Virus record (IMG/VR): IMGVR_UViG_3300043411_000921
Span: 1-64,000 of that record
DNA: 64,000 nt
Reading direction: 5' to 3' (one strand)
Positions within the stretch are counted from its first letter, which is position 1. Each line of letters begins with the position of its first letter. The translations under genes were made by a program, and so were the position numbers. Under the pieces are notes generated by a model, which made no database searches, was not told where the DNA came from, and worked only from the letters and a program-made list of their open reading frames with translations. Below, one piece after another: positions 1-37,062 of this stretch.

Positions 1-122
1 TCAACCAAGCCACAACCAATCTTCTTGTAAAGGTTCTCCAGCGTGATCTCGTCATCAAACGCAACCATCTTCATGGTAGCAGCCTCAATCAAAATGGAAC
101 CCTTGGTGCTCTTGATCGTCAT
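1..122 (-). CDS. Partial CDS (3' end outside window), DUF3846-like phage protein
   Basis: ATG at 122 with GGGAG SD; MTIKSTKGSILIEAATMKMVAFDDEITLENLYKKIGCGLV; downstream of promoter at 163-191. Confidence 0.6.
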   Translation of the reverse strand, partial: MTIKSTKGSILIEAATMKMVAFDDEITLENLYKKIGCGLV

Positions 123-162
123 GGTGTCTTTCTCCCTGTCGTTGCCGTCTTCCGATGTTCTG

Positions 163-228
163 ACTCTATCAGGCTTCTCTGATCTGGTCAAAGGGTTTCT
201 CTTCACTCCCTCTGGCACGATCCTTGCA
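163..228 (-). promoter_or_regulatory. Composite promoter 1: sigma70 TTGACC-17-TAGAGT (minus) + inverted sigma54-like box TGGCACGATCCTTGCA (213-228, plus)
   Basis: Read directly; -10 163-168, -35 186-191, 21 nt gap to box. Confidence 0.8.
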
Positions 229-258
229 GGGACAGCCGCCCCAGTTTTCTCTTTTCCC

Positions 259-360
259 AAATCGCTCCAGGAGGCTTTTGCGGGCGCTGCAAACCTGGGA
301 AGGAACCAAGGTCGTAGAAAAGGCAGAAGGCCCCGGAAGGGGCCTTCTCGTGTCAGTAAT
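259..360. repeat. Dispersed ~110-bp bipartite element, copy A
   Basis: CGCTCCAGGAGGCTTTT ... CCTTCTCGTG, arms 74 nt apart. Confidence 0.65.
325..348 (-). terminator. GC-rich hairpin AGAAGGCCCC-GGAA-GGGGCCTTCT, possible intrinsic terminator
   Basis: 10-bp perfect stem followed by GCCTTTTCT on minus strand; near-identical copy at 6295-6316. Confidence 0.55.
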
Positions 361-458
361 GGGGTGTTGGTAGCTCAGTGCTCTCCGATGCAGTCACGCT
401 GCATTCCGCCTGCCAACCTTATCCAGCACTTAGACCCCAGAATAACATTAGAATTGAA

Positions 459-659
459 TCACACGAAAAACATTTCTCGTTGAAAGTGTCCAGTGTCATC
501 CCACGAACAAGCACAATGAAAAAGCAATGGTGTCTCTCGACCCGGAATGCGAACACCAAACTTTTGAGTTTCCTTACAAGCCGAAATCACAGTTCCGTAT
601 TTGTAAGCATAATCGGAAGGAGTTCGAGTAAAGGAAACCGTGTTTCCAATCATTGGCAT
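459..659 (-). CDS. Hypothetical protein
   Basis: Fills gap in minus-strand unit; start uncertain (MPMIGNTV). Confidence 0.4.
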   Translation of the reverse strand: MPMIGNTVSFTRTPSDYAYKYGTVISACKETQKFGVRIPGRETPLLFHCACSWDDTGHFQREMFFV

Positions 660-679
660 GGGGCTGATGTACTGGAAGG

Positions 680-883
680 TCACTTCACCTTCACAACCTT
701 CCCATCCTTCACTTCGACTTCTGCATACCACTTGTGCGGCTGGGGATAATGCGGACCCTCAAGATATGCCTTCCCATTCGTGGGAGCAGTGCCAAGGCCA
801 GGGCAATAAACCCCAACTTCCTTACCAGCAGCAACAGCTTCCTTGAGGGCCTTCTTCGTCTGAAAGTTGATCGTGGAGTACAT
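680..883 (-). CDS. Conserved-looking small phage protein (MYSTINFQTKKALKEAV...GPHYPQPHKWYA)
   Basis: ATG 883 with GGAAGG SD and upstream TGGTAGAGT extended -10 (915-923). Confidence 0.75.
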   Translation of the reverse strand: MYSTINFQTKKALKEAVAAGKEVGVYCPGLGTAPTNGKAYLEGPHYPQPHKWYAEVEVKDGKVVKVK

Positions 884-942
884 TTTTGTTACCCTTCCCT
901 TTCCTGATGGTCTGACTCTACCAGAAGGTACTGAAGGAATTT

Positions 943-1017
943 TGGAACAGAGATTGGGATTCGAACCCAAATTTTCCTGCTATACAGCACGGAGTCCTAC
1001 CATTAGACGATCTCTGT
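943..1017 (-). tRNA. Atypical tRNA with encoded CCA; nominal anticodon GTA (Tyr) in a mispaired anticodon stem
   Basis: ACAGAGA/TCTCTGT acceptor stem, D arm GTCT-AATGGTA-GGAC, T arm TTGGG-TTCGAAT-CCCAA, T73-CCA. Confidence 0.8.
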
Positions 1018-1055
1018 AAAGTTGAGCGTTTATACCATGCGCTCCCCGGTATCTG

Positions 1056-1364
1056 TCAGACCGCCGTCTTGCGAGCCTGACGAGCGCGACCCTCAGCCAG
1101 GAACTCCTCGGCGTCTGCAACCGCCATGCCAAAGTCCTTCGTCCGAGCGAAGGTGAGCATCAGGCAGGCAGCCCGGCAAACCTCCGAACCAAGCTCGCCC
1201 TCGTGCTTGAGGTACGAGTTGATCGTCTCGTAAGCGTTGGTCTTGCGCTCCAGGTGCTCGGCCCAGCCCTGAGTCGTCCACTTGGACTCCGAACCACGGA
1301 GAACGTGGCGAGCGCAGCGGGCGGTGTGAAACAGAGAAGTGCGAGTCGTATTCGTGTTCGTCAT
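1056..1364 (-). CDS. Hypothetical early protein
   Basis: ORF with AGGA SD behind composite promoter 2. Confidence 0.7.
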   Translation of the reverse strand: MTNTNTTRTSLFHTARCARHVLRGSESKWTTQGWAEHLERKTNAYETINSYLKHEGELGSEVCRAACLMLTFARTKDFGMAVADAEEFLAEGRARQARKTAV

Positions 1365-1427
1365 GATGTTTTTTCCTTTGTCTTTCTTTTGTTGCTGAGG
1401 GCTTCGTTGCCCTCTCTTGATGTTCTT

Positions 1428-1522
1428 ACTCTACCCGAATCCCTCGATCCCTTCAAGGGGTTTCTCTCACTCAACCCTGGCATGGGATTTGCAAACCCAC
1501 ACCATCCGGCACGATCCTTGCA
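1428..1522 (-). promoter_or_regulatory. Composite promoter 2: TTGAAG-17-TAGAGT + two sigma54-like boxes (1478-1493, 1507-1522)
   Basis: TGGCATGGGATTTGCA and CGGCACGATCCTTGCA; 21 nt gap. Confidence 0.8.
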
Positions 1523-1530
1523 ACGGAATG

Positions 1531-2046
1531 TCAACTTTTGGTCTTTGCAGAGAAGTTGAAAAAAACCAGTTCGAGCCCGTGTTTCGCAAACAAAACAGAA
1601 AGCTCTTCACTAAGAGTCTTGGGAACAGCCGTTCCGACTGCAACCGCTTCCTCCTGCTTGGTGGGAGAAGGTGCTTGCGGCACCTTCTCCTCAACCAACT
1701 TCATTCCACAAGAAACTGGATCAAAACCTTTGGGAAAAACGGTTTCCTTGTTGAAAGTTGCATCTCGAAGGTTTGCACCTCGAAGGTTTGCACCTCGAAG
1801 GTTTGCACCTCGAAGGTTTGCACCTCGAAGGTTTGCACCTCGAAGGTCTGCACCCTCAAGGTCTGCATTCCGAAGGTCTGCATTCCGAAGGTCTGCACCT
1901 CGAAGGTCTGCACCCTCAAGGTCTGCATTCGAAAGGTTTGCATACGAAAGGTTTGCATCTGGAAGGCTAGCACGACGACCCTTCGGGTCGTCGTTGAGCC
2001 AGAGCTTGTGAAGATTGAGGATTTTGCTGAGTTCGGTCTGGTTCAT
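1531..2046 (-). CDS. Pentapeptide repeat protein
   Basis: A(D/N)LxG repeats; N-terminal HKLWL; cap [13 protein letters not shown]...GM. Confidence 0.9.
1764..1960. repeat. 15-bp coding tandem repeat (CTCGAAGGTTTGCAC x5 perfect, then degenerate)
   Basis: Encodes (GANLR)n. Confidence 0.9.
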
Positions 2047-2084
2047 GGTTTTCTTTCTTTCTGTTCCGCCTTGGTGATAATCTG

Positions 2085-2150
2085 ACTTTATCAGGTCAGG
2101 CTGCTCAGGCCAACTGGTTTCCTTCGATCCCAGTTGGTACGAAGGTTGCA
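2085..2150 (-). promoter_or_regulatory. Composite promoter 3: TTGGCC-17-TAAAGT + box TGGTACGAAGGTTGCA (2135-2150)
   Basis: Same 21 nt gap and CAGAxx-ATC start context. Confidence 0.7.
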
Positions 2151-2159
2151 AGCTAGTCA

Positions 2160-2882
2160 TCATTCTGAAACCAAGTCGTAAAATCTCAGAAACGCATCTG
2201 CGTCTTTTGTTTCTTTGGAAAAGGGAATGTAAAGTGGATCACCTGATTCGCTCAGAAAGAAATCAACCTCCAAGTCTTCCAAAGTTGCAACAAAAAAAGT
2301 AGAAGAGGAAGCTCTCATGAGCCGATAAAAGTTTTGTAGCGAAGGGTGAAACACAACTCCTTTCGTGGCCGCAGCGAGGGTGTTTCCGTTCTGGTTTCGT
2401 TGGAAAGGTTGTCCTGGGCTGAAACCCCGCTTCTCCATTTGAGAACAAATCCCAAACAAACGAGCCCAACAACCCTTTGGGCGAACACAATCCACAAAAT
2501 CAACAGAATCCGATGCAGTGACCTCAATCATTTTCGTTCCCACAAGGGAACAAGACTGAAAACCCGTTCTATCCATGATGCAGTTTGTAAAACTCGCACA
2601 TGAAAAATCGCAGTTGAACAGCCGTGCCCCTACGAAAGAAACACGGTTGAAAGCAGCATTGGAAAAGTTGCACTCGCGGAAGGTTGCCCAATCAAGAGTG
2701 CAATCCTCAAACAAAAACCCGGAAAAATCCTGGTTGGAAAGCTGGATTGGGAATCCAAGAATGTTGCGGCTGTTGGCCGTCAAAAATCGCTTCCCGTATT
2801 CGGCAAAATACCGTTCATCACCAGCAAGCATCTTCTGCCAATCAACGTTGCGAAAAACCTTTCTTGTGTCGGTCGTCACCAT
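2160..2882 (-). CDS. Pentapeptide repeat protein with C-terminal domain paralogous to 3666..4214
   Basis: [21 protein letters not shown]; shared GFxxGQxFxRNQxG and DFxLSxSG..YIPFS. Confidence 0.85.
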
Positions 2883-2931
2883 GATTCCGGTACCTCTCTT
2901 TCTTGGAAACCACAAATCTTAGAGTTGTTGG

Positions 2932-3159
2932 TTAAAACTCCCTCAAGACCTCTCGGCTGTTGACGCACGCCCGAGTTGCATTGTATACGGTTCCGTCAAC
3001 ATGCTTGCCGCAACTCATGCTCGGCCTATCAACGGCCTCGATTCCAGTGGGAACGCCCTGCTCCCACTTGGCGAGTACCTGCACTGCCTCCTCCTCGTCG
3101 CTAAACGCGACCAGAGTCACCATACCGTCATACGCAGCGTGAAGCATCAGAAGGAACAT
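2932..3159 (-). CDS. Hypothetical protein
   Basis: ORF in operon order. Confidence 0.6.
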   Translation of the reverse strand: MFLLMLHAAYDGMVTLVAFSDEEEAVQVLAKWEQGVPTGIEAVDRPSMSCGKHVDGTVYNATRACVNSREVLREF

Positions 3160-3212
3160 TGTTTTCTCGACTTTTGTTTATAGATGAGGAAGCAAATCTG
3201 AAATTCGTTGAT

Positions 3213-3554
3213 TCAAAACTTGGGTTGAGTCGTCCACCGCTCTTCCCGATAGAGGAAAGGAAAGTCCTGCACAAATCCCTGGGACTCTCCCACTAAATGG
3301 AAACCCTGCACCTTGCCATCGGGCATACGAATGCCAACCATAACCTGCCGACCAGGGAAGTCCGCAGCCGTCACCATTCCCAGCGTCGTGGGAATGTAAC
3401 AAGTGCAATCCATGAAACGAGTCTTGGACTCAACATGAGTTGCATTCGGAGGAGGAAGCACAACCACGTTGGCACGATCCCAACGAGTCTTGATGAGATC
3501 ACCGTTGAGGGCATCAAAAAATCGAATCGTCTTGAGAAAGTTGCTCATCATCAT
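3213..3554 (-). CDS. Hypothetical protein
   Basis: GAGG SD; behind composite promoter 4. Confidence 0.7.
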   Translation of the reverse strand: MMMSNFLKTIRFFDALNGDLIKTRWDRANVVVLPPPNATHVESKTRFMDCTCYIPTTLGMVTAADFPGRQVMVGIRMPDGKVQGFHLVGESQGFVQDFPFLYREERWTTQPKF

Positions 3555-3590
3555 GGCGAACCTCGTCTTGTTTGCTGTTTGGATGTTCTG

Positions 3591-3655
3591 ACTCTACCAG
3601 ATCAGGTTGCTGGAATCAAGGAGTTGTTTGGTGGTGGGTTGGCACGGAAGTTGCA
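3591..3655 (-). promoter_or_regulatory. Composite promoter 4: TTGATT-17-TAGAGT + box TGGCACGGAAGTTGCA (3640-3655)
   Basis: 20 nt gap. Confidence 0.8.
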
Positions 3656-3665
3656 GACGGTTGGG

Positions 3666-4214
3666 TCATCCCGGTTCGGAAACTGGGCTGTAATACTCCA
3701 AAAACTCTTTCAATGCCTTGTGATCATTTGAAAAAGGAATGTAAAACTCCTTTCCAGAATCACTCAACAGGAAATCTTTTCCTTCCTGGGGGGCGATGAG
3801 TGTAAAAGTGGAACAGGTTTCTACAAATCGCATAATGCCTGGGGCTTTGTCGATAAAATCTGCCTGCAAACCTTTGCTTTGGAGAAAATGGCGGTTGCGC
3901 GGAATCGCCTGTGCGAGAGTGATACCCTTTTGATTTCGTGTGAAAGCCTGACCGTGCTGAAAGCCCCTGAGCTTCATCGAAGAAATGGCCTTGCCAAATC
4001 CTTTGCGAAGCTCACACTCGTAAAACACCTCACTGCCAGAAAACACAACACCCTTGAATCGAGCATTACGAAACTTGCACTGTTCAAATCTCACAGACGA
4101 ATCGAAAACACAGCCATCAAACGTGTAATCCCAGAAATCTTCACCCCAAATGTGAGTGTCCTGCTTGCCGGAAAGAAACTTCTGCCACGATTTACTATCG
4201 AAAAACTTCTCCAC
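3666..4214 (-). CDS. Short pentapeptide repeat protein, paralog of 2160..2882
   Basis: TFDGCVF..VRFEQCKFRNARF; shared C-terminal domain. Confidence 0.75.
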   Translation of the reverse strand: MEKFFDSKSWQKFLSGKQDTHIWGEDFWDYTFDGCVFDSSVRFEQCKFRNARFKGVVFSGSEVFYECELRKGFGKAISSMKLRGFQHGQAFTRNQKGITLAQAIPRNRHFLQSKGLQADFIDKAPGIMRFVETCSTFTLIAPQEGKDFLLSDSGKEFYIPFSNDHKALKEFLEYYSPVSEPG

Positions 4215-4234
4215 GTTGAATCTCCTTGGTTGAT

Positions 4235-4645
4235 TTATGGGTTGACGAGAATCATTCCAGCCGCAACGGGATCAAAACCAATAGGAAACACGGTCCTGGC
4301 ATCATAAAACGCAAACTTGAAGTTGAAGTTTGCTTTGCGGAGACAAGCACCAGTGAAATCGGCTCCTTGCAATAGCGCATATTGAAGGTTCGTATCCCCA
4401 AGATTGCAACCCTCAAATTCAGCATCGCGCAAATCGGCACGCTCCATGCTCACTCCAAAAAACGAAGCGCCCATGAAAAGTGCTTGCCGGAGGTCGCAAC
4501 CATTCATATACAAATCCTCCAGCCGAAGAAACTGAAAATCAGCTTGCTCTGCCTTGGGAGAATAGTTTCCGTGACAAAGCCAACAAAAATGGCTTTTGAC
4601 AATCTTCTTAAAAGTCTTCTGATCAATTGAGCTACTCATTGTCAT
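4235..4645 (-). CDS. Pentapeptide repeat protein
   Basis: ADLRDAEFEGCNL; cap YDARTVFPIGFDPVAAGM. Confidence 0.9.
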   Translation of the reverse strand: MTMSSSIDQKTFKKIVKSHFCWLCHGNYSPKAEQADFQFLRLEDLYMNGCDLRQALFMGASFFGVSMERADLRDAEFEGCNLGDTNLQYALLQGADFTGACLRKANFNFKFAFYDARTVFPIGFDPVAAGMILVNP

Positions 4646-4680
4646 TCAGTCCCTTCTGTCTGGTTGATGATCACAACCTA

Positions 4681-4965
4681 CTAGTCGTTGGTGTTGAAGA
4701 ATCGCTTGTGAAATGCAAACCCAAGAAATCCGCAAAGGAAGGCGTTTGCGACGGTTCTGTCTCCAGCGTCGAGGATGCCATACGCACACCAGTACGCAGC
4801 AACATTTCCAGCAAAAACCAGCAACGAAACAGGAAACGTGGGATAACTCGACAGCGAGCGAATGATTTCATCCCACTCATCATAAAACCACTCAGAAATC
4901 CAGAAAAAACCAAGAGCCAAAGGAACTGCAAACAACTCGTAATTGTCAATGAGAAAACTGAGCAT
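4681..4965 (-). CDS. Small membrane protein
   Basis: Three hydrophobic segments. Confidence 0.6.
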   Translation of the reverse strand: MLSFLIDNYELFAVPLALGFFWISEWFYDEWDEIIRSLSSYPTFPVSLLVFAGNVAAYWCAYGILDAGDRTVANAFLCGFLGFAFHKRFFNTND

Positions 4966-5010
4966 GGAAGTGTGAAACCTTTTTGGTGATTTGTGTTTGG
5001 ATTGCTGATT

Positions 5011-5271
5011 TCAGTGATGCTTGACGTAAGTCAGAATGAGAAGGACAACGGAGATGAGAGAGCCGAGCGAACCCGCAACTGCTACCAGCCAACCAAGAAT
5101 GAACGAGCCAACACCAAAAATTCCAACAAAATGGTTTGGATCGCCACCAAACTTGGAATCTTGCAAATAAGCCGCAGAGGCCACGCCGCCAACCAACTTG
5201 AGAATGACAGAAAGACCGATGAGAGCAAGACAAGTGACAAGACCAATGCCACTGCTGAGAAAATCCAGCAT
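5011..5271 (-). CDS. Small membrane protein
   Basis: Two long hydrophobic segments. Confidence 0.6.
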   Translation of the reverse strand: MLDFLSSGIGLVTCLALIGLSVILKLVGGVASAAYLQDSKFGGDPNHFVGIFGVGSFILGWLVAVAGSLGSLISVVLLILTYVKHH

Positions 5272-5326
5272 GATGATTTTTGTTTCTTTCTTTGGGGTCT
5301 TTGTGAGTTGGGTTGAGTTGAGGAAA

Positions 5327-5566
5327 TCAGTGATGAGAGAAGAACAAACCGATCTGGAGAATGAGAGAGATAAGACCGAGAATGCTGCCAATGCTGCTGA
5401 TCAACCAAGAAAGGAAAACAAGAACGCCGCCCGTGCTCTCCTCAACCCTGCAATCATTTACTGCCCAAACAGCGTAAAGCTGTGCGACAATGCCAACAAC
5501 GAAGAGAGCAGCACACACGAGCAGACCAAAACCAGTTGCGAGGAACTCCATCATTGTTTTATCCAC
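5327..5566 (-). CDS. Small membrane protein, similar layout to 5011..5271
   Basis: Two TM segments; WL...GS.LG/LIS.IL...HH C-terminus. Confidence 0.6.
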   Translation of the reverse strand: MDKTMMEFLATGFGLLVCAALFVVGIVAQLYAVWAVNDCRVEESTGGVLVFLSWLISSIGSILGLISLILQIGLFFSHH

Positions 5567-5756
5567 CTTTCAGAAGGAACAGAGTGATTGTGAGAATGAA
5601 ACCTGCCAGGAAGATGACTTTACCACACTTCCAGGAAAACACAAGCGGTTTGTAAAGGTTGTCTCGGAAGGTATGAGTCCCAAGGTAAACCCGAGAAACA
5701 AACGAAACAAACAACCCAAACAAACCGAGAAGAACACCAAGAAGGTAATGCTGCAT
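5559..5756 (-). CDS. Small membrane protein
   Basis: Two TM segments; overlaps next start. Confidence 0.55.
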   Translation of the reverse strand: MQHYLLGVLLGLFGLFVSFVSRVYLGTHTFRDNLYKPLVFSWKCGKVIFLAGFILTITLFLLKGG

Positions 5757-5765
5757 TTCTTTTGG

Positions 5766-6107
5766 TTATTCTACTTCACAAGAAGAAGGAACCAAAATCA
5801 TTCCCCGCCGCTTCGGATTGAACCCTTCTGGGAACTTGGTTTTGTGATTGTAGGTTGCGCCCCACAGTTTCGACCCGTACAAATACGCACCTGTGAGGTC
5901 AGCCCCCTCAAAACGAGCTTTCATCAAGTTCGTTTTGATAATGTTGGCCTGAACCAAACAAGTATTTCGGAAATCCAACCCCTCCAGGTTTTCCATGTGT
6001 GAAGAAAAAGGACGGCCAACACTATTCTGGAGTTCGTCAATAGTCCTTACTTCTCCAAGCCAGATCAAGTGCCGGGCAATCCTTACTTCCAACTCGTTTT
6101 GGTTCAT
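5766..6107 (-). CDS. Pentapeptide repeat protein
   Basis: ARFEGADLTGAYL; cap YNHKTKFPEGFNP..GM. Confidence 0.9.
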   Translation of the reverse strand: MNQNELEVRIARHLIWLGEVRTIDELQNSVGRPFSSHMENLEGLDFRNTCLVQANIIKTNLMKARFEGADLTGAYLYGSKLWGATYNHKTKFPEGFNPKRRGMILVPSSCEVE

Positions 6108-6130
6108 GTCGCCTTCTTTCTGATGCTCTT

Positions 6131-6196
6131 ACCCTACCACACATTTTCCAGCCGGTCAAAACCTTTCCTCGTGCCAGCTTCGGCATGGGGCTTGCA
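6131..6196 (-). promoter_or_regulatory. Composite promoter 5: TTGACC-17-TAGGGT + box CGGCATGGGGCTTGCA (6181-6196)
   Basis: 21 nt gap. Confidence 0.8.
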
Positions 6197-6228
6197 GGGA
6201 TAGCGGCCCTCGTTTGCTCGTGTCAAAA

Positions 6229-6330
6229 ACGGTTCGAGGATGCTTTCTAGTGCCAGGAAATAAACCTGACGACCTGGGAGACGCTGGAAATGATGAAGGC
6301 CCCGGAAGGGGCCTTCTCGTGGCAGGAATG
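6229..6330. repeat. Dispersed ~110-bp element, copy B (includes hairpin 6295-6316)
   Basis: AGGATGCTTT ... GAAGGCCCCGGAAGGGGCCTTCTCGTG. Confidence 0.65.
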
Positions 6331-6340
6331 ATATGGTGGG

Positions 6341-6712
6341 TTAGTTGGCGGCGGGGTTCATCACTTCAATGCTGACAGAGGTGGAGTAAAAACCATTGCT
6401 GGTTCCACACCAACGAATCGTCATGGTTCCACCATGAGAGCGAAGAGTATAAAACGTCCATTGCTGCTCGTCTCCATACTCAGAAGTTTCGCCGTTGGAA
6501 TCTTCCGACGCAGAAAGGATTTCGTGCCCAATCAGGTCTTGAGGCTCACAACCAATCACTTCCTCAACACTCACACTCTCGCAACACTCCTGATAGTGAA
6601 ACATCCGAATCACCTTTCCAGACTTCATGGTGAAACAGATATTATCACTCCCAGACTCACAACCCGTAATCGAAACAGGAACCTCACCAACAAACTCGTT
6701 CATGTTACTCAT
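6341..6712 (-). CDS. Conserved phage protein (HxQxCCExV ... WxGxSNGxYSxxV family)
   Basis: Motifs MFHYQECCESV, WTFYTL, WCGTSNGFYSTSV. Confidence 0.75.
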   Translation of the reverse strand: MSNMNEFVGEVPVSITGCESGSDNICFTMKSGKVIRMFHYQECCESVSVEEVIGCEPQDLIGHEILSASEDSNGETSEYGDEQQWTFYTLRSHGGTMTIRWCGTSNGFYSTSVSIEVMNPAAN

Positions 6713-6747
6713 TTTGTTTTTCTCTTCTTTCTTTTTGACTATCAGTG

Positions 6748-6954
6748 TCAAATGAGATTCAGGTTTGCAAACTCATTGCAGAGATAGAACTCAGAGCCCC
6801 TGGCGCTCTGCTTCTTGCAAAAGAGTTCACGATTTCCAACGTAACCAACCTCAAACACCTTCCCGGTGTTGAGAGCCGTGCGATGCTCCCAATGAATCTG
6901 GCCCAAACCAGCCATGTTCGCAATGTCCTGCATTTCCTGCTTGTTGTCGTTCAT
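6748..6954 (-). CDS. Hypothetical protein
   Basis: AAGGA SD. Confidence 0.6.
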   Translation of the reverse strand: MNDNKQEMQDIANMAGLGQIHWEHRTALNTGKVFEVGYVGNRELFCKKQSARGSEFYLCNEFANLNLI

Positions 6955-6975
6955 GGTTGTTTGTTCCTTTTACTC

Positions 6976-7170
6976 TCAGAGAGCCATCTCGAAATACAGA
7001 TCACAAACCGAGCAAATCCAGGTGCCAGGAACCGCAATCCTTCCACACTTGGAAGTGCCATCACGACCACGAAGGGTGAACATGGTCTGGTTGATCGGCC
7101 CAACCTTCTTCTCGTCGTTGCACCCGCAAAACTTGCAAGGCTCTTGAACCGTCTTGGTGTTGGAAGTCAT
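6976..7170 (-). CDS. Small Zn-ribbon protein
   Basis: CKFC ... CSVC; GGAG SD; behind promoter 6. Confidence 0.65.
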   Translation of the reverse strand: MTSNTKTVQEPCKFCGCNDEKKVGPINQTMFTLRGRDGTSKCGRIAVPGTWICSVCDLYFEMAL

Positions 7171-7202
7171 GATGTCTCTCCGTCTGCTCTTGGGATGGTC
7201 TG

Positions 7203-7267
7203 ACTCTATCAGACAACCCCCAGCCGTTCAAGGGATTTTTCGTGGAAGCCTTGGCACGACCCTTGCA
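7203..7267 (-). promoter_or_regulatory. Composite promoter 6: TTGAAC-17-TAGAGT + box TGGCACGACCCTTGCA (7252-7267)
   Basis: 20 nt gap. Confidence 0.8.
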
Positions 7268-7635
7268 CGCTTCTGAAGTCGAGGACAACCATTCTTCGGA
7301 ATCATCCACCTTTTCATTCTCTTATCAGGCAAACGTGTTTCCTTGTCGTAAACAGCACGAAAAAAACATGCGCATTCCCAATACCGAACATGCCCCAAAT
7401 CAGCACCTCGCAAATCCGCACGGCTGAAATCAGAGCCATCAATTTCTAAAGCTCCAAAATTCGCGTAACGCAAATCAGCGCCGCAAAACTTGTAGTTGTC
7501 CATCATCGGGAACCGAAAGGTCGCACCAACCAAGAAACATTTGCTGAAATTGAATCCAGCCCAACGATCAAAACTAAAAACTAAACCAAACCCAGAACGC
7601 ATTGATTTTCTTTCTTCTTTCACCCACAACATCAT
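7228..7635 (-). CDS. Pentapeptide repeat protein
   Basis: [22 protein letters not shown]; YDKETRLP. Confidence 0.8.
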   Translation of the reverse strand: MMLWVKEERKSMRSGFGLVFSFDRWAGFNFSKCFLVGATFRFPMMDNYKFCGADLRYANFGALEIDGSDFSRADLRGADLGHVRYWECACFFRAVYDKETRLPDKRMKRWMIPKNGCPRLQKRARVVPRLPRKIP

Positions 7636-7637
7636 CC

Positions 7638-7765
7638 TCTCTCTCCCCTTTCCTAAGCAATCCAATGAAACTTTGTGGATGATTTAGGAAAGGGGAGAGA
7701 GAAGGAGATTGGGTGGATTGAATTGACTCCCTGAAAGACTATTCCTAATCCTCCAGGGAGTCAAT
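7638..7765 (-). promoter_or_regulatory. Two inverted repeats (19-bp stem 7638-7702, 12-bp stem 7722-7765) between the radA-like gene and a pentapeptide gene
   Basis: Perfect stems; the first sequesters the SD of 7228..7635. Confidence 0.7.
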
Positions 7766-7774
7766 CAACATCTT

Positions 7775-8818
7775 TCAGAGGAAGTTGATACCGTTGCGGG
7801 TGATCTCGTATTCAAACTCTACGCCCGCGGAGCCCCAGCGGTTCTTTGCCACATCGAGGAGACGGCAACCATAGTTCTCCGACTTCCTGTCAGTGTTCTT
7901 CCGCATGTGAAGGTGCATGTCAATGGCGTGCTTCACACCATTCGTACCAAGAAACTCTCCATCCTTGCCAACCTGCGAAACGAACATCGCAACGGTGTAA
8001 TGCTGCTTCGTCCAAGCGTTGAGGCGATAAACCGCCTCCTCCTGCTGCTTCTGATCGCCCTTCTGACGACCAGCACCCGGACGAGTGCAGCCGACAGTCT
8101 GAATCGAGTCAATGAACAGAAAGAAACCGCGCTGCTCGGCAATCAGATCAAACTTGCAGTGCTCCTCCCGCAGGAGATCCGCATAAGCCAGAATGTCGCC
8201 AATGTCAACGAAGCTGGAAAAGAAAGCCTTACAGTCAGGGGAAGAGAGGTTGCGAAACCCCTTCTGCTCTGCACGAAGCATAACCTGCTCGGGCGACTCC
8301 TCACCACCATTGAGAAGGACAACGTGGCCCTGTCCAAGCAAAGCGTTGATCATCTGAAGAGTCCAGGTGCTCTTACCGCCACCAGACATACCCGAAATCA
8401 TGGCGAGAGTGCTGGGACGGATACCATCACCAGTGAACATCGCATCCGTATGAGCACAACCAGAAGGAAGGCTAACACGCAGACGCGGATCAATCTCAAT
8501 CTCTGCGAAGGCACCAGCACGCTCCACACCAAGCGACAGACGGCTGTGGGTCGGAGCCGAAGCAACCTCAACCTGCTGCTGCGACACGGAGCCCGCAGGC
8601 CGCTGAATCTGCGTGGACATGGTGAAGGAGCGCACGGGAGGCGTCAAAGCAACCCGGACAATCTCATTGTTGACGATTGCGTAACCCGGAACATGCTTGC
8701 CGCTAAGGAGCGCGTCAATCGTGCGCTGCTGCGGACCACGCTTCATACCAGAAGTGTTCACCGTAATGATGGTGCTGGGGTTGGTGTTGCTGGGACCGTT
8801 GTCGTTGGCGTTCGTCAT
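7775..8818 (-). CDS. RadA/Sms-like ATPase (RecA superfamily)
   Basis: Walker A GMSGGGKST, GEESPEQV, Walker B FIDSIQ, KHAID, KNRWG (KNRFG motif). Confidence 0.9.
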   Translation of the reverse strand: MTNANDNGPSNTNPSTIITVNTSGMKRGPQQRTIDALLSGKHVPGYAIVNNEIVRVALTPPVRSFTMSTQIQRPAGSVSQQQVEVASAPTHSRLSLGVERAGAFAEIEIDPRLRVSLPSGCAHTDAMFTGDGIRPSTLAMISGMSGGGKSTWTLQMINALLGQGHVVLLNGGEESPEQVMLRAEQKGFRNLSSPDCKAFFSSFVDIGDILAYADLLREEHCKFDLIAEQRGFFLFIDSIQTVGCTRPGAGRQKGDQKQQEEAVYRLNAWTKQHYTVAMFVSQVGKDGEFLGTNGVKHAIDMHLHMRKNTDRKSENYGCRLLDVAKNRWGSAGVEFEYEITRNGINFL

Positions 8819-8824
8819 GGTCCT

Positions 8825-8931
8825 AACCTACCAGACTCCCCCAGACGGGTCAAAGGGTTTTTCGATCACATCCTTGGCATGAGAGTTGCAAACAGCTCAA
8901 GCCAACACCAAACAGTGGCACGAGCCTTGCA
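8825..8931 (-). promoter_or_regulatory. Composite promoter 7 (leaderless): TTGACC-17-TAGGTT-6-ATG + boxes 8875-8890 and 8916-8931
   Basis: TGGCATGAGAGTTGCA, TGGCACGAGCCTTGCA; 21 nt gap. Confidence 0.8.
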
Positions 8932-8981
8932 ACGTATCCTTATATGGCTCTCCCAGGTTTCTCAGATTTGTTTCCTGGACT

Positions 8982-9680
8982 CTATCGCTCCAAAGTATCA
9001 ATCAATGAAAACAATTCGCTTTCATTAACCAAACGGTGAACGAGTGGAATGTCATGTCTTGCCGTTGCGATGATAATGGTTTTGTTGTCTGCCACCATTC
9101 CAAGAATTTCTTCACCGTGCGCCATTGCGTATCCAGCCAAATTCAACTTGTAGAGTTTGCTTCCGATTTGGTAGTGCGTGTTTGCTGCCGGATATTGAAC
9201 TGGGTGTTTGGTCAGTTGTGTAAACCGACATCCGTAAAGTCGTGCTGTTTTAAGCGTGCTGTATTTGAAGGAACAACGAGTAAGACGCGCATTCAAAAAA
9301 GAGGCGCCCTCAAACACGCATCTTTTCAAGTTCGAATCAAGAAATCTTGCTCCAAAGAATTCTGCGTCAGTGAAATTGCACTGCTCGAACCAAGATTTTC
9401 CAACATGGGAATCATTAAATTGAGCCCCTTTGAAGCTGCAATTCTCGAAGAAAACATCTTTCAAGTAGGTGTAGCTGAAATCAAATCCAGACAAGTCGAG
9501 GTTTTCAAACTTGAAAACTATTGTTCCCGGCATGTTTCTGTATGTTGTTCTGTTTGACTCGTGATAAATCCTTTCGAGCCATTTTCCTCCAGAGCAGGAT
9601 GGCATGTTACCCCTTCTGTTTTTGCGTTGGTTTTCTGTCTCCTTCAGGAAATCGTGCCAAAATTGTGCTTGTGTTTTCAT
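8982..9680 (-). CDS. Pentapeptide repeat protein
   Basis: FENCSFKGAQF..CNFTDAEFFGARF. Confidence 0.85.
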   Translation of the reverse strand: MKTQAQFWHDFLKETENQRKNRRGNMPSCSGGKWLERIYHESNRTTYRNMPGTIVFKFENLDLSGFDFSYTYLKDVFFENCSFKGAQFNDSHVGKSWFEQCNFTDAEFFGARFLDSNLKRCVFEGASFLNARLTRCSFKYSTLKTARLYGCRFTQLTKHPVQYPAANTHYQIGSKLYKLNLAGYAMAHGEEILGMVADNKTIIIATARHDIPLVHRLVNESELFSLIDTLER

Positions 9681-9692
9681 TGTGTTGTTTTC

Positions 9693-10427
9693 TCAGTCGT
9701 TAGGGTTTTTGGTAACAGCCACGAAAGTTCCATGAATAAGCCAGAGTGGTAAATCTCGGTAAATCTCTCCTGTCGCTGGGCAGGTGAATGAGAAGGTTTT
9801 TGTTTTGGTGTTCACGTCAAACAACATCACCATCATTCCATTTTCAACGCCGAAATTCAATTTCGCCTTGGAGAAATCAAAGGTTTCCAGAATGAAACTG
9901 AGTAAGGCTTCGATCCTAACAGCTTTGGCGAGTGCCCCAGTAACCAAGCCCTTCTCTTTTGGATCAGAGAATCTAGCAGTGGAAATGCCATCACACTGGG
10001 AAAATGCGCAACCCGTTAGGTTCGCATCCCTGAAGTCTGCAAAACACAAGTTGGTGTTGAGAAACCCTGCTTGTGTTAGATCAGCACCTGAAAAGTTTAC
10101 TGAGTCTGCATAACAGTTTCGAAAAACATGCCCTGTCAGGTTCATCCCAGAAAAGTTTGCAAAGTTCAAACGATCCAGCAGAAACTCTTTGCTCATTTGT
10201 TGTGGTGTGTTGCGAAAATCAACACCCTCCTTGATATCTTTCCTTGGATCGTATTTCCTTGGAAACCACTTGTACCAGTTCTCGAAAATGAATCTTGTAG
10301 AGTAAACCGTCGGATAGACAACCAAAAAGAGCAACACCTTCAAAAACAACAAAATCATGGTATGTGCAACAAGAACACAAACAATGTTTTCACTCAGAAA
10401 GTTTTTGATTTGTTGTTTGGTTGGCAT
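9693..10427 (-). CDS. Pentapeptide repeat protein with N-terminal TM helix
   Basis: VNFSGADLTQAGF..ADFRDANLTG; hydrophobic N-terminus. Confidence 0.85.
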   Translation of the reverse strand: MPTKQQIKNFLSENIVCVLVAHTMILLFLKVLLFLVVYPTVYSTRFIFENWYKWFPRKYDPRKDIKEGVDFRNTPQQMSKEFLLDRLNFANFSGMNLTGHVFRNCYADSVNFSGADLTQAGFLNTNLCFADFRDANLTGCAFSQCDGISTARFSDPKEKGLVTGALAKAVRIEALLSFILETFDFSKAKLNFGVENGMMVMLFDVNTKTKTFSFTCPATGEIYRDLPLWLIHGTFVAVTKNPND

Positions 10428-11260
10428 AGCGGAGGCGGCTCCTTGAGCATGGTGAGGATTCTGGAGTTGGAGAACTTTTGAGTTTTACCTGTTTCTGGGA
10501 ATAGTAGTGTAAACGTCTTCTTGTTTTTCTCAACCACAACACCAAACGGAATTTGTTCTTCTGGGAGGCAGGAAAGGATTGCCGAACTCTGAGGGTTATA
10601 TTTCTCTGAAGGTTTATGGGCAACCTTCAACAATTTTCCAACCGCAAGATCAACTGGTTTTGGCGGGATGCTCTTTGAATCCCACGGAACATCTAGTTTG
10701 TATTGTCCTGTTGTTTCATTGGGAAAGAAGGGAAACGCAGCCCCAAACAGTGACGTTTGACTTAAATCACAATCAACAAACCAGCGTTTTTCAGAGTATC
10801 TTTGCGGGAAAGCTCCAACGAACCGAGCATTATCAAACTTGCATCTTTCGAAGTAGAAGCAACCTTCCATGCTCTTCACAAATTTGCAGCCACTAAAGTC
10901 ACAATCAATGAACCTGCAATTTCCAGGCGCCATAGACAACCAAAATTCACACCCTCTGAAATCTGCTTTTCTGATAACAATTTCTCCGGTTTTGGATAAC
11001 GCCATCTCCTCAAAGTTTTCAAGTGCGCGATACAAAACGTCTTGGCTGCGTGGATAAGCAAACCCAGCAGTTGGATTCTTTGGATCTTCAAACAGCTTTT
11101 TGTATCCAATGATCCAGTTGTTTAGTTTGAGTTGATGCCCTTTGTTCCCGTTGGTCTTCAACCAAAGCAAATGGGAAAGAAGGAACTTCCTGAGTTGCCG
11201 CTTCTCGTATGGAAGATGGCGAAGGGGTTTGTTGAGTGGATCAGCTTTGGGATGAATCAT
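10394..11260 (-). CDS. Pentapeptide repeat-containing protein
   Basis: HLLWL; ADFRGCEF, CRFIDCDFSGCKF; C-terminal KKTFT..P.TG shared with 9693..10427. Confidence 0.75.
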   Translation of the reverse strand: MIHPKADPLNKPLRHLPYEKRQLRKFLLSHLLWLKTNGNKGHQLKLNNWIIGYKKLFEDPKNPTAGFAYPRSQDVLYRALENFEEMALSKTGEIVIRKADFRGCEFWLSMAPGNCRFIDCDFSGCKFVKSMEGCFYFERCKFDNARFVGAFPQRYSEKRWFVDCDLSQTSLFGAAFPFFPNETTGQYKLDVPWDSKSIPPKPVDLAVGKLLKVAHKPSEKYNPQSSAILSCLPEEQIPFGVVVEKNKKTFTLLFPETGKTQKFSNSRILTMLKEPPPLCQPNNKSKTF

Positions 11261-11780: not shown

Positions 11781-12611
11781 TCAAGTCATTCCTCTGAGGG
11801 ACTTGTAGAGATTTGAATACATCATTTCTGGATCATTCTCAGACAACCCAGCACGCTGACCATCCGAAATCTCAATCACAATCCAGTTTCCATCTTCCTT
11901 TTGAGCAACATCCAAAGTGAAGAAAGGAATGTTGGGAGACACTCTCTCAGCAGCTTCGCTAAGGATGCTGGGAGGAATAATAGAGGCGTCTGGTGGTGAG
12001 GATAACCCTGCGTCATCTACCGGCCAATAGAAGCCACTAGAAAGCATCCTCGAACCATAGAAGAACAGTCTAAATTCCATCGACACAGGACAAGACTTCC
12101 CATCCCAGCAACCAAGTCTTTTCAATGGAACATATTCCCGAGCAACGATTTGTTGACCATCAAATCTTGGGTTGTTGTTCATTTCGACGAGAAGGTTGAT
12201 GGCTTGCTGTTTGTCAGCCGCAAACATCTTGTTCCAGCGAGACTTATCCGCTTTCGCTCCCTTCACAATAAAACCTTTGTGTTCGGGGAAGGTTGGAAGG
12301 GTTGAAAAGTCTGTGTAAGTTTTTGGTGTGAGTTCATCCAGGTCATAAGACCAACTGGACGGATCATCCGCATAGACATACGCTCGACGATCATTCAACA
12401 GCGTACCGCCCAGCCTTTTGACTTGGGTTTCAACTCTACGAGGCCAAGGCCACATCGTATGCCTTGCAATCACCAAATCCCCAGGCTGAACATCCAAAAC
12501 ACAATCAGAAATCACGAAGTCTGTGTGATTCCTTACTGCATCTAGTTCTCCTGGATCAATAACAGATGCTTCAAACAGCCAAAGGATTCTGCCAAGATGA
12601 GGAGTATTCAT
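11781..12611 (-). CDS. ATP-grasp domain protein (R2K-clade-like)
   Basis: EFRLFF; FFTLDVAQKEDGNWIVIEISDGQRAGL. Confidence 0.8.
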   Translation of the reverse strand: MNTPHLGRILWLFEASVIDPGELDAVRNHTDFVISDCVLDVQPGDLVIARHTMWPWPRRVETQVKRLGGTLLNDRRAYVYADDPSSWSYDLDELTPKTYTDFSTLPTFPEHKGFIVKGAKADKSRWNKMFAADKQQAINLLVEMNNNPRFDGQQIVAREYVPLKRLGCWDGKSCPVSMEFRLFFYGSRMLSSGFYWPVDDAGLSSPPDASIIPPSILSEAAERVSPNIPFFTLDVAQKEDGNWIVIEISDGQRAGLSENDPEMMYSNLYKSLRGMT

Positions 12612-13240
12612 TTGTTGGTGTTCGGAATCGGAGTTCTTGTTGAAAGATCGAACAAAGCAAGGGAAAGACGACGACAAGCTTCGTGCCAAGCTGTTCGAAC
12701 TTCTGGGTTTTCAGACTCAGCAAACCTCTTGGAATTCTTGTCGTAATATTGAAGGTTAGAACAGGCGTCTTGTGCTTTGCCGAGAATTTTTGCGCTAAAA
12801 ACCTGTGCAGGAGTAAGTTTTTTGGATTCTCTGTTTCCATAGCCAAAACCATAGGTGGAGCCAACCCCTTCTTCGTGTGGACCACAAACTCTGACATCTT
12901 CACCAATCCCACAAAGAGCACTGAGAGCAAATCCGGGACAGCCATCGGAATGCCAGTTTTGGTTCAATTCTTCAAGCTGATGCCAATGAGCTTCTCCGCA
13001 AAAAACGCACGCAACCGTTTGATCACATGCCTCATACATCCAAGGCATCACTTCAACCAACTCTGTCAAAACCTCTTCGTAATTCCCAAGCACTCGCTCC
13101 AGCAACTTCCTCATCTCTTCTGGAGAAAGAGAGTCAAGACCACTGGTTCTGAGTGTTTTGGTCTGCTCAAGAGTGAGACAGTGTTTCAGTTTGTGTGTGA
13201 GGTTTGGATCAACCTCGTTTTCATTCGGTGGCATCGTCAT
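12608..13240 (-). CDS. Hypothetical protein with CxxC...HxxxC motif
   Basis: CVFCG...HSDGCP; GAGG SD. Confidence 0.65.
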   Translation of the reverse strand: MTMPPNENEVDPNLTHKLKHCLTLEQTKTLRTSGLDSLSPEEMRKLLERVLGNYEEVLTELVEVMPWMYEACDQTVACVFCGEAHWHQLEELNQNWHSDGCPGFALSALCGIGEDVRVCGPHEEGVGSTYGFGYGNRESKKLTPAQVFSAKILGKAQDACSNLQYYDKNSKRFAESENPEVRTAWHEACRRLSLALFDLSTRTPIPNTNK

Positions 13241-33048: not shown

Positions 33049-33359
33049 TTGAGTTCAACCCAATCCCCCTGCAAATAAGCATTGAACCAACCTGTCCTAC
33101 CATCTTCCAACAAAACATGGAAAAGTAAGCAATTTTGTTCTTCCTTGAAGTTCGTATATTCAAAACCGACAACCAAGAAATTGCACGGCTTGATAACCAA
33201 GAAACTGTCTTCCCAGGAATAGGGAAGACGATTAATTGGCTTTGTTGTGTAAAACTCAACTCGGACGTTCTTGAATCGCGGGTCGTGTTTCCAAGAAAAA
33301 CAAAACAGCTTGCCCACCAAATTTTCAGGCGTATTGCCATGTTTTTTACGCACAGACAT
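33045..33359 (-). CDS. Array-family protein
   Basis: LVGKLF; FLVVG; VLLEDGRTGW. Confidence 0.7.
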   Translation of the reverse strand: MSVRKKHGNTPENLVGKLFCFSWKHDPRFKNVRVEFYTTKPINRLPYSWEDSFLVIKPCNFLVVGFEYTNFKEEQNCLLFHVLLEDGRTGWFNAYLQGDWVELK

Positions 33360-37049: not shown

Positions 37050-37062
37050 GGTCTTCCCTTCT

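What the first reader, a model, noticed from the sequence alone, without database searches (positions are those of the whole stretch)
163..8931. Repeated composite promoter: sigma70 promoter back-to-back with an inverted sigma54-consensus box at fixed spacing
Seen: seven minus-strand sigma70 promoters (TTG(A/G)NN-17-TA(G/A)(A/G)(G/T)T, then 6 nt and AT(C/G)) have -10 elements at 163, 1428, 2085, 3591, 6131, 7203 and 8825. Each has a plus-strand (T/C)GG(C/T)A(C/T)G-N4-TTGCA box 20-21 nt beyond its -35 (213, 1478, 2135, 3640, 6181, 7252, 8875); second boxes occur at 1507 and 8916. I saw no such box beyond 9 kb, and none at the later sigma70 promoters. Established: TGGCACG-N4-TTGC is the -24/-12 RpoN consensus, and sigma54 holoenzyme binds it stably without firing until an enhancer-binding protein acts. 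Here the box points away from the gene, antisense to the upstream gene, and occupies about -57 to -72 of the sigma70 promoter, a class-I-activator-like position. Inference: the phage may co-opt sigma54 holoenzyme (or an RpoN-box mimic) as an activator or insulator of early promoters, make antisense RNAs, or titrate sigma54 away from host stress regulons such as psp and rtc. It also implies an rpoN-positive host.
Basis: partly seen in the sequence, partly recalled or inferred. Interest (0 to 1): 0.86.

Follow-up and report, generated by a model that had tools for sequence, protein, structure and literature searches.

The report
Phage early promoters paired with sigma-54 boxes
An uncultivated 241-kb phage repeats, at least 23 times across its early genes, an 80-bp cassette joining a strong ordinary (sigma-70) promoter to a textbook sigma-54 promoter that points the opposite way at a fixed 20-21 bp, suggesting a so far undescribed use of the host's sigma-54 polymerase by a phage.

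Summary
All seven minus-strand sigma70-type promoters and all nine plus-strand boxes lie at the stated coordinates. The box pattern has 10 matches in the window against 0.06 expected by chance.

The window is bases 1-64000 of a 241,399-bp IMG/VR phage contig. In near-identical contigs the cluster runs on past window position 1, giving at least 23 cassettes in about 27 kb.

I located promoters without using the box. That census gave 61-63 distinct promoters of this type in related phages, and every one carries the box. The spacer is 20-21 nt in all but one case (22 nt), although its box-side half is only 34% identical between copies.

The box profile is YTGGCAYGR-N3-TTGCW, with GG in 63/63 and the -12 C in 59/63. 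That is the sigma54 -24/-12 consensus in full detail. The box always points away from the gene it precedes. Its distance to the upstream gene's stop codon varies from -40 to +368 nt, so it is tied to the sigma70 promoter.

I found no RpoN or enhancer-binding protein in the phage, and the host is unknown.

Best reading: a back-to-back sigma70/sigma54 promoter cassette, with host sigma54 polymerase poised to fire antisense. Function is inferred, not shown. Interest is high, and I class it as a new variant of known kinds.

The parts
154..228 (-). Cassette 1. Sigma70-type promoter on the minus strand: -10 at 163-168, -35 at 186-191, predicted start about 156. Inverted sigma54 box on the plus strand at 213-228 (TGGCACGATCCTTGCA), predicted start about 239.
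   Evidence: spacer 21 nt
1419..1522 (-). Cassette 2. -10 at 1428-1433, -35 at 1451-1456. Proximal box at 1478-1493 and second box at 1507-1522, both on the plus strand.
2076..2150 (-). Cassette 3. -10 at 2085-2090, -35 at 2108-2113 (TTGGCC). Box at 2135-2150 (TGGTACG variant), 9 nt past the stop codon of the upstream gene.
3582..3655 (-). Cassette 4. -10 at 3591-3596, -35 at 3614-3619, box at 3640-3655. Spacer 20 nt.
6122..6196 (-). Cassette 5. -10 at 6131-6136, -35 at 6154-6159, box at 6181-6196 (CGGCATG variant).
7194..7267 (-). Cassette 6. -10 at 7203-7208, -35 at 7226-7231, box at 7252-7267. The upstream ORF 7228-7665 runs through the box and stops inside the -35.
8816..8931 (-). Cassette 7, upstream of the KaiC/RadA-like ATPase gene 7775-8818. 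-10 at 8825-8830, -35 at 8848-8853. Boxes at 8875-8890 and 8916-8931.
229..356 (.). Conserved non-coding element of about 130 nt on the far side of box 1. It includes GAGAATCGCTCCAGGAGG-like DNA and the hairpin at 325-348, which is the terminator of the upstream operon. About one third of family cassettes share it.
6197..6325 (.). Second copy of that element (the GGTTCGAGGATG variant), with the hairpin at 6295-6316.
1116..1131 (-). The only gene-sense box (TGGCATGGCGGTTGCA). It lies inside ORF 1056-1364, about 100 nt upstream of the tRNA gene.
911..1017 (-). tRNA gene at 946-1017, followed directly by an orphan cassette-type extended -10 (TCTGGTAGAGTCAGA, 911-925). The tRNA occupies the place where a -35 and box would be.

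Best explanation
Each unit is a back-to-back divergent promoter cassette of about 80 bp.

One half is a strong host sigma70 early promoter. It has TTGAC(C/T), a 17-nt spacer, an extended -10 (TGnTAGAGT), and a conserved RGAAACYC tract just upstream of the -35. It drives the small early genes on the minus strand.

The other half is a genuine sigma54 (RpoN) -24/-12 element on the opposite strand. Its predicted start lies 82-83 bp from the sigma70 start, roughly eight helical turns. The two polymerases would therefore sit back to back and share the 20-21 bp upstream spacer.

Proposed mechanism (inferred, not shown):
1. Host sigma54 holoenzyme binds each box as a stable closed complex and stays silent while sigma70 transcription of the early genes proceeds.
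2. An enhancer-binding ATPase then acts. This is most likely a host one, possibly one that works from solution. It might instead bind the conserved TCTGA-N5-TCAGA palindrome, which overlaps the sigma70 -10 and lies about -73 from the sigma54 start.
3. The box then fires away from its own gene, into the preceding terminator or early gene.
4. The resulting convergent, antisense transcription helps time or shut off the early genes.

As a side effect, about 30 high-affinity sites per genome would hold a large share of a scarce sigma factor.

Shown: the sequence identity to the sigma54 consensus, the fixed geometry and orientation, and conservation across diverged relatives. Inferred: binding, firing and effect.
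For: - Box enrichment: 10 matches against 0.06 expected.
- Box-blind census: 61-63 distinct promoters of this type in the window, three IMG/VR contigs and about 20 metagenome/NCBI loci all carry the box.
- Profile: Y-27 62/63, T-26 59, GG 63/63, C-23 59, A-22 63, Y-21 63, G-20 61, R-19 61, N3 at about 0.1 bit, T-15 60, T-14 63, G-13 63, C-12 59, W-11 59. This matches the conserved GG and TGC elements and the validated Salmonella promoters listed in PMC3844500. The yeaG promoter there has the same 15-nt core as the box at 8875.
- Spacer length is 20-21 nt in 60/61 units, while its box-side 10 nt are only 34% identical. That equals the N4 (36%) and the sigma70 spacer (35%), so length is conserved although sequence is not.
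- The distance from the upstream stop codon to the box ranges from -40 to +368 nt. The box is therefore tied to the sigma70 promoter.
- Of 71 distinct strict boxes in family DNA, 55 are proximal and 5 are distal second boxes. Nearly all of the remaining 11 are cassette boxes that my promoter regex missed, or third boxes.
- Sigma70-type promoters in the same genome that lack the box also lack the CAGA arm of the palindrome.
- Sigma54 holoenzyme is known to bind promoters in an inactive state, often antisense or inside genes (PMC4591121). Activators that lack a DNA-binding domain can fire any sigma54 promoter (PMC3844500).
- Unrelated phage contigs also cluster sigma54-consensus boxes next to strong promoters, beside Fur-like and DnaA boxes. 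Phages carrying binding sites for host regulators is therefore not unique to this family.
Against: - The host is unknown, so the presence of rpoN is unverified.
- No enhancer-binding protein or RpoN was found in the window. Exact scans for the FGHEKGAFTGA and ARRTVAKYR motifs did not hit the phage contig.
- No gene lies downstream of any box in its own direction.
- The region beyond the box shows no convincing conserved RNA structure.
- Four of 63 boxes have TTGAA in place of TTGC.
- Second boxes lie 29 or 41 bp from the first. That is too close for two holoenzymes to bind at once.
- A candidate enhancer at -73 is closer than the usual 80-150 bp.
- There are no transcript or binding data.
Confidence: 0.42

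Rival explanations
1. Sigma54 holoenzyme (or free sigma54) binds the boxes but never fires. The boxes would act as a decoy that drains sigma54 from host stress regulons. Alternatively they would act as an architectural partner of the early promoter, by competing for or sharing the A-tract, by acting as a topological barrier, or as an insulator.
For: - There are about 30 consensus sites per genome.
- No activator gene and no downstream gene were found.
- The fixed 20-21 nt spacing to the -35 suggests physical coupling with the sigma70 polymerase.
- Other phage contigs carry tandem or face-to-face box arrays, spaced 18-28 bp apart, that cannot all be promoters.
- The phage carries its own RNA-repair genes (RNA ligase, kinase-like and phosphoesterase genes). 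This fits a conflict over host RNA-damage responses.
Against: - A pure decoy needs neither fixed spacing nor a single orientation, yet every cassette-linked box points away from the gene its sigma70 promoter drives; the single gene-sense box, at 1131-1116, is not cassette-linked.
- Roadblock repression by bound sigma54 holoenzyme was not seen in E. coli (PMC4591121).
- No precedent is known to me for sigma54 holoenzyme activating a neighbouring sigma70 promoter.
Confidence: 0.25
2. The box is the operator of another DNA-binding protein, either phage-encoded or from a host that lacks sigma54. The protein would act from about -64 as a class-I-type activator or as a repressor of the early promoters. 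The likeness to the sigma54 consensus would be coincidence or mimicry.
For: - The position, centred near -64, is typical of upstream activators.
- The box reads as an 11-bp-spaced direct repeat, T(G/T)GCA ... T(G/T)GCA, as used by winged-helix response regulators.
- TTGAA variants exist.
- The host is unknown.
- Most early proteins have no known domain.
Against: The profile matches the sigma54 consensus at 14 positions, including its asymmetry: CAYGR follows the first half-site only. It also has uninformative bases exactly where sigma54 has none. An unrelated protein sharing all of this is unlikely. No helix-turn-helix or RpoN-domain protein was detected in the window.
Confidence: 0.2
3. The box has no present function. 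It is a relic carried along as part of a mobile promoter/terminator cassette that spreads by recombination, as PeSL cassettes do in T4-like phages.
For: - The cassettes are repeated between small, variable early ORFs.
- About one third include a shared terminator hairpin and about 100 nt of further conserved DNA.
- Assemblies break in this region.
Against: The non-specified positions have diverged to about 34-36% identity. The 12-14 specified box positions stay at 88% pairwise identity with GG invariant, and the spacer length stays fixed. That pattern indicates purifying selection on the box itself.
Confidence: 0.1

Closest known systems
Sigma54 (RpoN) -24/-12 promoters of bacteria, e.g. the validated Salmonella and E. 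coli sets (PMC3844500, PMC4591121)
   Same: Same sequence profile: YTGGCAYGR-N3-TTGCW with invariant GG and near-invariant GC at exact spacing. Individual boxes are indistinguishable from validated promoters.
   Different: They lie in a phage. They are repeated at least 23 times. They always lie 20-21 nt from the -35 of a sigma70 promoter in the opposite orientation. No gene lies downstream, and no cognate activator or clear enhancer was identified.
Antisense and intragenic sigma54 binding sites of E. coli (Bonocora et al. 2015, PMC4591121)
   Same: Consensus sites that point against, or lie within, genes. They are bound in an inactive state, and their function is largely unknown.
   Different: The E. 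coli sites are scattered, weaker on average and not positioned relative to other promoters. Here the geometry is fixed and the sites are near-consensus.
Divergent sigma70/sigma54 promoter pairs in which the activator's binding sites overlap the sigma70 promoter (pspF-pspA in E. coli; xylR Pr / xylS Ps of the TOL plasmid). This comparison rests on my own knowledge.
   Same: A back-to-back sigma70 and sigma54 promoter. A conserved palindrome over the sigma70 -10 could both repress that promoter and serve as an enhancer for the sigma54 one.
   Different: In the known cases the sigma70 promoter drives the activator's own gene, and the start sites lie further apart. Here the downstream genes are pentapeptide-repeat and unknown proteins, the starts are only 82-83 bp apart, and the unit is multicopy.
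PeSL composite terminator/early-promoter cassettes of T4-like phages (PMC2839356, PMC4122927)
   Same: Short conserved cassettes with an early sigma70 promoter, often preceded by a terminator stem-loop. They are repeated among small variable early ORFs and are likely substrates for modular shuffling.
   Different: No sigma54 element has been described in PeSLs. Only about one third of the units here carry the stem-loop. The phage shows no detectable relation to T4-like phages in the window.

Membership tests
sigma54-dependent promoter | GG and GC doublets exactly 10 bp apart (-24/-12) | tested here: met
   GG 63/63, G-13 63/63 and C-12 59/63 in box-blind promoter-anchored units. All 9 window boxes meet it.
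sigma54-dependent promoter | Extended consensus YTGGCACGR-N3-TTGCW with uninformative central bases | tested here: met
   position table, compared with the validated promoters listed in PMC3844500.
sigma54-dependent promoter | Host encodes RpoN and the holoenzyme binds the site | not testable with these tools
   Host not identified. No binding data.
sigma54-dependent promoter | Enhancer-binding AAA+ activator with an upstream activating sequence 80-150 bp upstream | tested here: inconclusive
   No Sigma54_activat domain in 145 window ORFs. No FGHEKGAFTGA-coding DNA in the phage contig. Only a candidate palindrome at about -73.
sigma54-dependent promoter | A gene or defined RNA downstream in the promoter's direction | tested here: not met
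   All genes are on the other strand. The downstream DNA is the 3' end of the preceding gene or a non-coding element without convincing structure.
sigma70 (housekeeping) promoter | -35 TTGACA-like and -10 TATAAT-like hexamers, a 17±1 spacer, and an ORF with a ribosome-binding site downstream | tested here: met
   TTGA 60/61, TA...T 61/61, spacer 17 in 61/61, extended TG 61/61. ORFs start 2-121 nt downstream.
PeSL cassette of T4-like phages | Early promoter immediately preceded by a terminator stem-loop, repeated in hyperplastic regions of a T4-like genome | tested here: not met
   The stem-loop is present in only about one third of units. No T4-like relationship was found. It works like a PeSL in being a repeated early cassette, but it is not a member.
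Class I activator site (CRP-type) | Dimer-symmetric site centred near -61.5, -71.5 and so on, bound by a transcription factor that contacts the alpha C-terminal domain | tested here: inconclusive
   The centre at about -64 fits. However, the box is asymmetric rather than palindromic, and no factor is known.
pspF-pspA / xylR-xylS type divergent pair | The sigma70 promoter of the pair drives the activator gene itself | tested here: not met
   The downstream genes encode pentapeptide-repeat proteins, a KaiC/RadA-like ATPase and unknown proteins.

The most novel reading that the evidence does not exclude
A lytic jumbo phage has built host sigma54 holoenzyme into the architecture of every one of its 23 or more early promoters. 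The silent closed complex would be a fixed-geometry partner of sigma70 transcription, acting as a switch, barrier or decoy. The box arrays in unrelated phage contigs would mean that phage exploitation of sigma54 is widespread and has been overlooked.
Probability: 0.3. Interest if true: 0.88.

Novelty: new variant of a known kind. Interest (0 to 1): 0.72.

Why it matters
As far as I know and could find, sigma54 has not been described as part of phage gene control. Known phage takeover strategies target sigma70, sigmaS or the core polymerase.

A conserved multicopy cassette that couples every early promoter to a sigma54 site would be a new regulatory design. It could work as an early-gene timer that depends on the host's ATP-driven activators, or as a trap for a scarce sigma factor that controls envelope-stress and RNA-repair responses relevant to infection.

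It would also give a natural system for studying interactions between two polymerase holoenzymes bound back to back, and a host-range marker (an rpoN-positive host) for an uncultivated jumbo phage.

Tried and rejected
- A small ORF running through the cassette (169-309, minus strand). Rejected because 20-nt and 21-nt spacers break the frame between copies.
- A conserved structured small RNA from the box to the hairpin. RNAalifold gave only -5.5 kcal/mol and little covariation outside the terminator stem. Indels also rule out a conserved peptide.
- Rfam found only the tRNA.
- Phage RpoN or an enhancer-binding protein. Pfam scans of 145 window ORFs and of 47 ORFs from the other box-array phages found none. 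Exact-motif scans of IMG/VR were negative for this phage.
- Host identification. There was no DNA or close protein relative among 50,697 phage records. The MnmA search and the promoter-core search of 185,579 genomes found nothing. Assembly accessions were not found in the literature.
- A partial walk beyond the window end showed IMPDH-like, RNA ligase, NUDIX and glycosyltransferase genes but no regulators. I stopped it as too costly.
- One search was a mis-specified pattern with the wrong gap length, so its zero result means nothing. One search is the corrected scan.
- An IHF or Fis site, and an RNA-level element in read-through transcripts, were considered. Both were dropped because the consensus does not fit or the pairing potential is negligible.

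Full report
**The observation.** Reading window 1-9600 and scanning for YGGYAYG-N4-TTGCA gave ten matches against 0.06 expected, with no shuffle reaching ten. Nine are on the plus strand at 213, 1478, 1507, 2135, 3640, 6181, 7252, 8875 and 8916, all between genes or at gene ends. A scan for TTGNNN-(16-18)-TARRKT found the seven minus-strand promoters at the stated places. An alignment of the seven units shows the shared layout on the gene strand: TGCAA-N4-CRTGCCA, 20-21 nt, TTGAC(C/T), 17 nt ending in TGn, TAGAGT, CAGAnCATC. The tenth match is on the minus strand at 1131-1116, inside ORF 1056-1364 and about 100 nt upstream of a tRNA gene at 946-1017. Five other sigma70-like promoters later in the window have no box.

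**Context.** All real genes in the region are on the minus strand. They encode many pentapeptide-repeat proteins, a KaiC/RadA-like ATPase and small proteins of unknown function. The 15-nt repeats at 1760-1960 read A-N-L-R-G on the minus strand, which confirms the gene orientation. The window is bases 1-64000 of IMGVR_UViG_3300043411_000921, a contig of 241,399 bp. It looks like an uncultivated jumbo phage. It carries R2K ATP-grasp, amidoligase, gamma-glutamyl cyclotransferase, RNA ligase, MnmA, exonuclease and deaminase genes. It has no close relative among 50,697 deposited phage genomes.

**The cluster is larger than the finding.** Near-identical contigs from NCBI metagenome assemblies extend past window position 1 in the direction of transcription. 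They carry at least 16 more cassettes over about 17 kb. The phage therefore has at least 23 cassettes, and about 30 boxes counting second boxes, in about 27 kb of small early-type genes. The window holds only the upstream end.

**Relatives.** Pattern scans found a diverged relative in IMG/VR (L079, eight or more cassettes) and about 20 metagenome loci of the same family. I then located promoters without using the box, anchoring on TTG, the spacer, the extended -10 and the family's post -10 bases. I asked what lies upstream of each. All 61-63 distinct promoters of this type have the box. The only anchors without it are chance matches or other promoter types elsewhere in the window.

**Box profile.** In the sigma54 orientation the counts are: -27 Y 62/63, -26 T 59, -25 G 63, -24 G 63, -23 C 59, -22 A 63, -21 Y 63, -20 G 61, -19 R 61, -18/-17 about 0.1 bit, -16 Y 53, -15 T 60, -14 T 63, -13 G 63, -12 C 59, -11 A/T 59. 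This is the sigma54 consensus in full, including its asymmetry and its uninformative centre. Validated Salmonella promoters in PMC3844500 look the same. The yeaG promoter there shares its 15-nt core with the box at 8875. The four boxes with TTGAA instead of TTGC resemble weaker sites that are still bound in E. coli (PMC4591121 tables).

**Geometry.** The box-to--35 spacer is 21 nt in 37 units, 20 nt in 23 and 22 nt in one. The -35/-10 spacer is 17 nt in all 61. Mean pairwise identity is 34% in the box-side ten bases of the spacer, 36% in the N4 and 35% in the sigma70 spacer. It is 88% at the specified box positions. The cassettes are therefore old copies in which sequence has drifted freely wherever it is not specified, yet the length has not changed. 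I read that as selection on spacing, which is an inference. The promoter-side half of the spacer carries a conserved RGAAACYC tract, with AA in 61/61, where a proximal UP-element subsite would lie. The distance from the upstream ORF's stop codon to the box ranges from -40 to +368 nt. The box is therefore positioned relative to the sigma70 promoter and not relative to the upstream gene. For cassette 1 the predicted sigma70 start is at 156 and the predicted sigma54 start at 239. That is 83 bp apart, or 82 bp with the 20-nt spacer, roughly eight helical turns.

**Other conserved features.** The extended -10 and the bases after it form a palindrome, TCTGA-N5-TCAGA, with both arms at least 82% conserved. 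Its right arm has no known role for sigma70 and is absent from the box-less promoters of the same genome. It is centred at about -9 of the sigma70 promoter, which is about -73 of the sigma54 promoter. About one third of cassettes also carry a conserved element of roughly 130 nt beyond the box. It contains GAGAATCGCTCCAGGAGG-like or GGTTCGAGGATG-like DNA and the terminator hairpin of the preceding operon. Indels break any reading frame, and RNAalifold finds little beyond the terminator stem. I cannot assign it a role.

**Search for sigma54 components.** Pfam scans of 145 window ORFs found no RpoN, enhancer-binding, sigma or helix-turn-helix domains. Exact scans of IMG/VR for DNA encoding FGHEKGAFTGA found 24 contigs, and scans for ARRTVAKYR found 6. 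Neither scan hit this phage's contigs. This excludes only canonical versions. The host could not be identified. Standard -35/-10 promoters and Shine-Dalgarno sequences argue against Bacteroidota, but nothing more can be said.

**Interpretation.** A chance likeness, or an unrelated protein with the same 14-position asymmetric specificity, is unlikely. I take the boxes to be real sigma54 sites with about 0.65-0.7 probability.

- *What fits sigma54 biology.* The holoenzyme forms stable, silent closed complexes and needs an ATP-driven activator to fire (PMC3844500, PMC4591121).
- *Preferred model.* The layout is a back-to-back sigma70/sigma54 pair. I prefer a poised antisense promoter that, once activated, transcribes against the preceding early unit. 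The palindrome could serve as a combined operator and enhancer, by analogy with pspF-pspA and xylR-xylS (my own knowledge).
- *Silent-binding rival.* Silent roles, such as a decoy for a scarce sigma factor or an architectural partner, are nearly as likely. They explain the absence of any activator or downstream gene. A pure decoy does not explain the single orientation and fixed spacing.
- *Roadblock insulation.* This is disfavoured by the E. coli result that bound holoenzyme did not affect overlapping genes.
- *Relic reading.* This is disfavoured by the conservation pattern.

**Comparison with known systems.** As a repeated early promoter cassette among variable small ORFs, sometimes with a terminator stem-loop, it behaves like the PeSL cassettes of T4-like phages (PMC2839356, PMC4122927). 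It is not a member of that class, because only about one third of the units carry the stem-loop, the window shows no T4-like relationship, and no sigma54 element has been described in PeSLs. As a sigma54 site it meets the sequence definition but fails the test of having a downstream gene. Literature searches found no description of sigma54 boxes in phage early promoters.

**Beyond this family.** The same scans turned up unrelated phage contigs with clusters of sigma54-consensus boxes:
- L126 has eight boxes in 2.7 kb, some spaced 18-26 bp apart, next to Fur-like palindromes and strong sigma70 promoters.
- L133 has a box divergent from a strong promoter and flanked by Fur-like boxes.
- L030, L040 and L120 have arrays of 5-8 boxes in both orientations, beside two DnaA boxes.
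- L153 has eight boxes in 3.5 kb.

These are phages, carrying terminase, ThyX and GP88 genes, and none carries an RpoN domain. The scans were designed to find boxes, so frequency cannot be judged from them. The multiplicity per locus is nevertheless far beyond chance, which suggests a wider phenomenon.

**Verdict.** The sigma54 identity of the box is well supported at the sequence level. The function is open. I class it as a new variant of known kinds, namely sigma54 promoters, divergent promoter pairs and phage early promoter cassettes, and I rate its interest as high.

Noticed in passing
L177:10300-20309 and L182:1-19673 (NCBI contigs JARYGD010000675.1 and JARYGD010001213.1, same phage): The cassette cluster continues past window position 1, with at least 16 more units. 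The window shows only one end of an early region of about 27 kb. Assemblies break repeatedly in this region.
   Followed up: yes
window 1116-1131 (-), 946-1017 (-), 911-925 (-): The single gene-sense sigma54 box lies about 100 nt upstream of a tRNA gene. Directly after the tRNA is an orphan cassette-type -10 with no -35 or box, as if the tRNA had replaced the upstream half of a cassette. Relatives carry tRNA-Lys(UUU) genes inside the cluster.
   Followed up: partly
window 229-356 and 6197-6325; alignment A6: A conserved non-coding element of about 130 nt lies between the operon terminator hairpin and the box in about one third of cassettes. It includes the palindrome GCTCCAGGAGC. A similar sequence forms the 3' coding end of a gene just upstream of the box-less promoter at 27665. 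It is neither coding nor clearly structured.
   Followed up: partly
window 154-172 and the equivalent place in every cassette: The palindrome TCTGA-N5-TCAGA overlaps the -10 and the bases after it. It is specific to box-bearing promoters and is a candidate operator for an early-gene repressor or activator.
   Followed up: partly
window 1478-1522; L130, L160, L165, L177:14850-14895, L182:14909-14954: Double-box modules are spaced 29 nt apart, with the conserved inverted repeat GGGATT-GCA-AATCCC centred on the -12 element of the proximal box.
   Followed up: no
L126:1-1560, L133:2500-2930: Unrelated low-GC phage contigs carry tandem sigma54-consensus boxes beside perfect Fur-type palindromes (AATGAGAATCATTCTCATT) and strong sigma70 promoters. 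They look like arrays of binding sites for host regulators.
   Followed up: partly
L030:1-200, L040:6040-6240, L120:5360-5560 (IMG/VR 3300044723_000506 and _001572): Arrays of 5-8 sigma54-consensus boxes occur in both orientations, some face to face, next to two DnaA boxes (TTATCCACA) at contig ends. This may be an origin-like or regulatory region of a 36-kb phage.
   Followed up: partly
window 1531-11260 and L177/L182: There is an unusual density of pentapeptide-repeat proteins among the early genes: eight or more in the first 22 kb. They are possibly DNA mimics used in host takeover.
   Followed up: no
window 11781-12689, 33346-34482, 35733-37196, 52606-53490: R2K ATP-grasp, amidoligase and gamma-glutamyl cyclotransferase genes are present, together with RNA ligase, a kinase-like AAA_33 protein and phosphoesterases. 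These are typical jumbo-phage peptide-ligase and RNA-repair sets.
   Followed up: no
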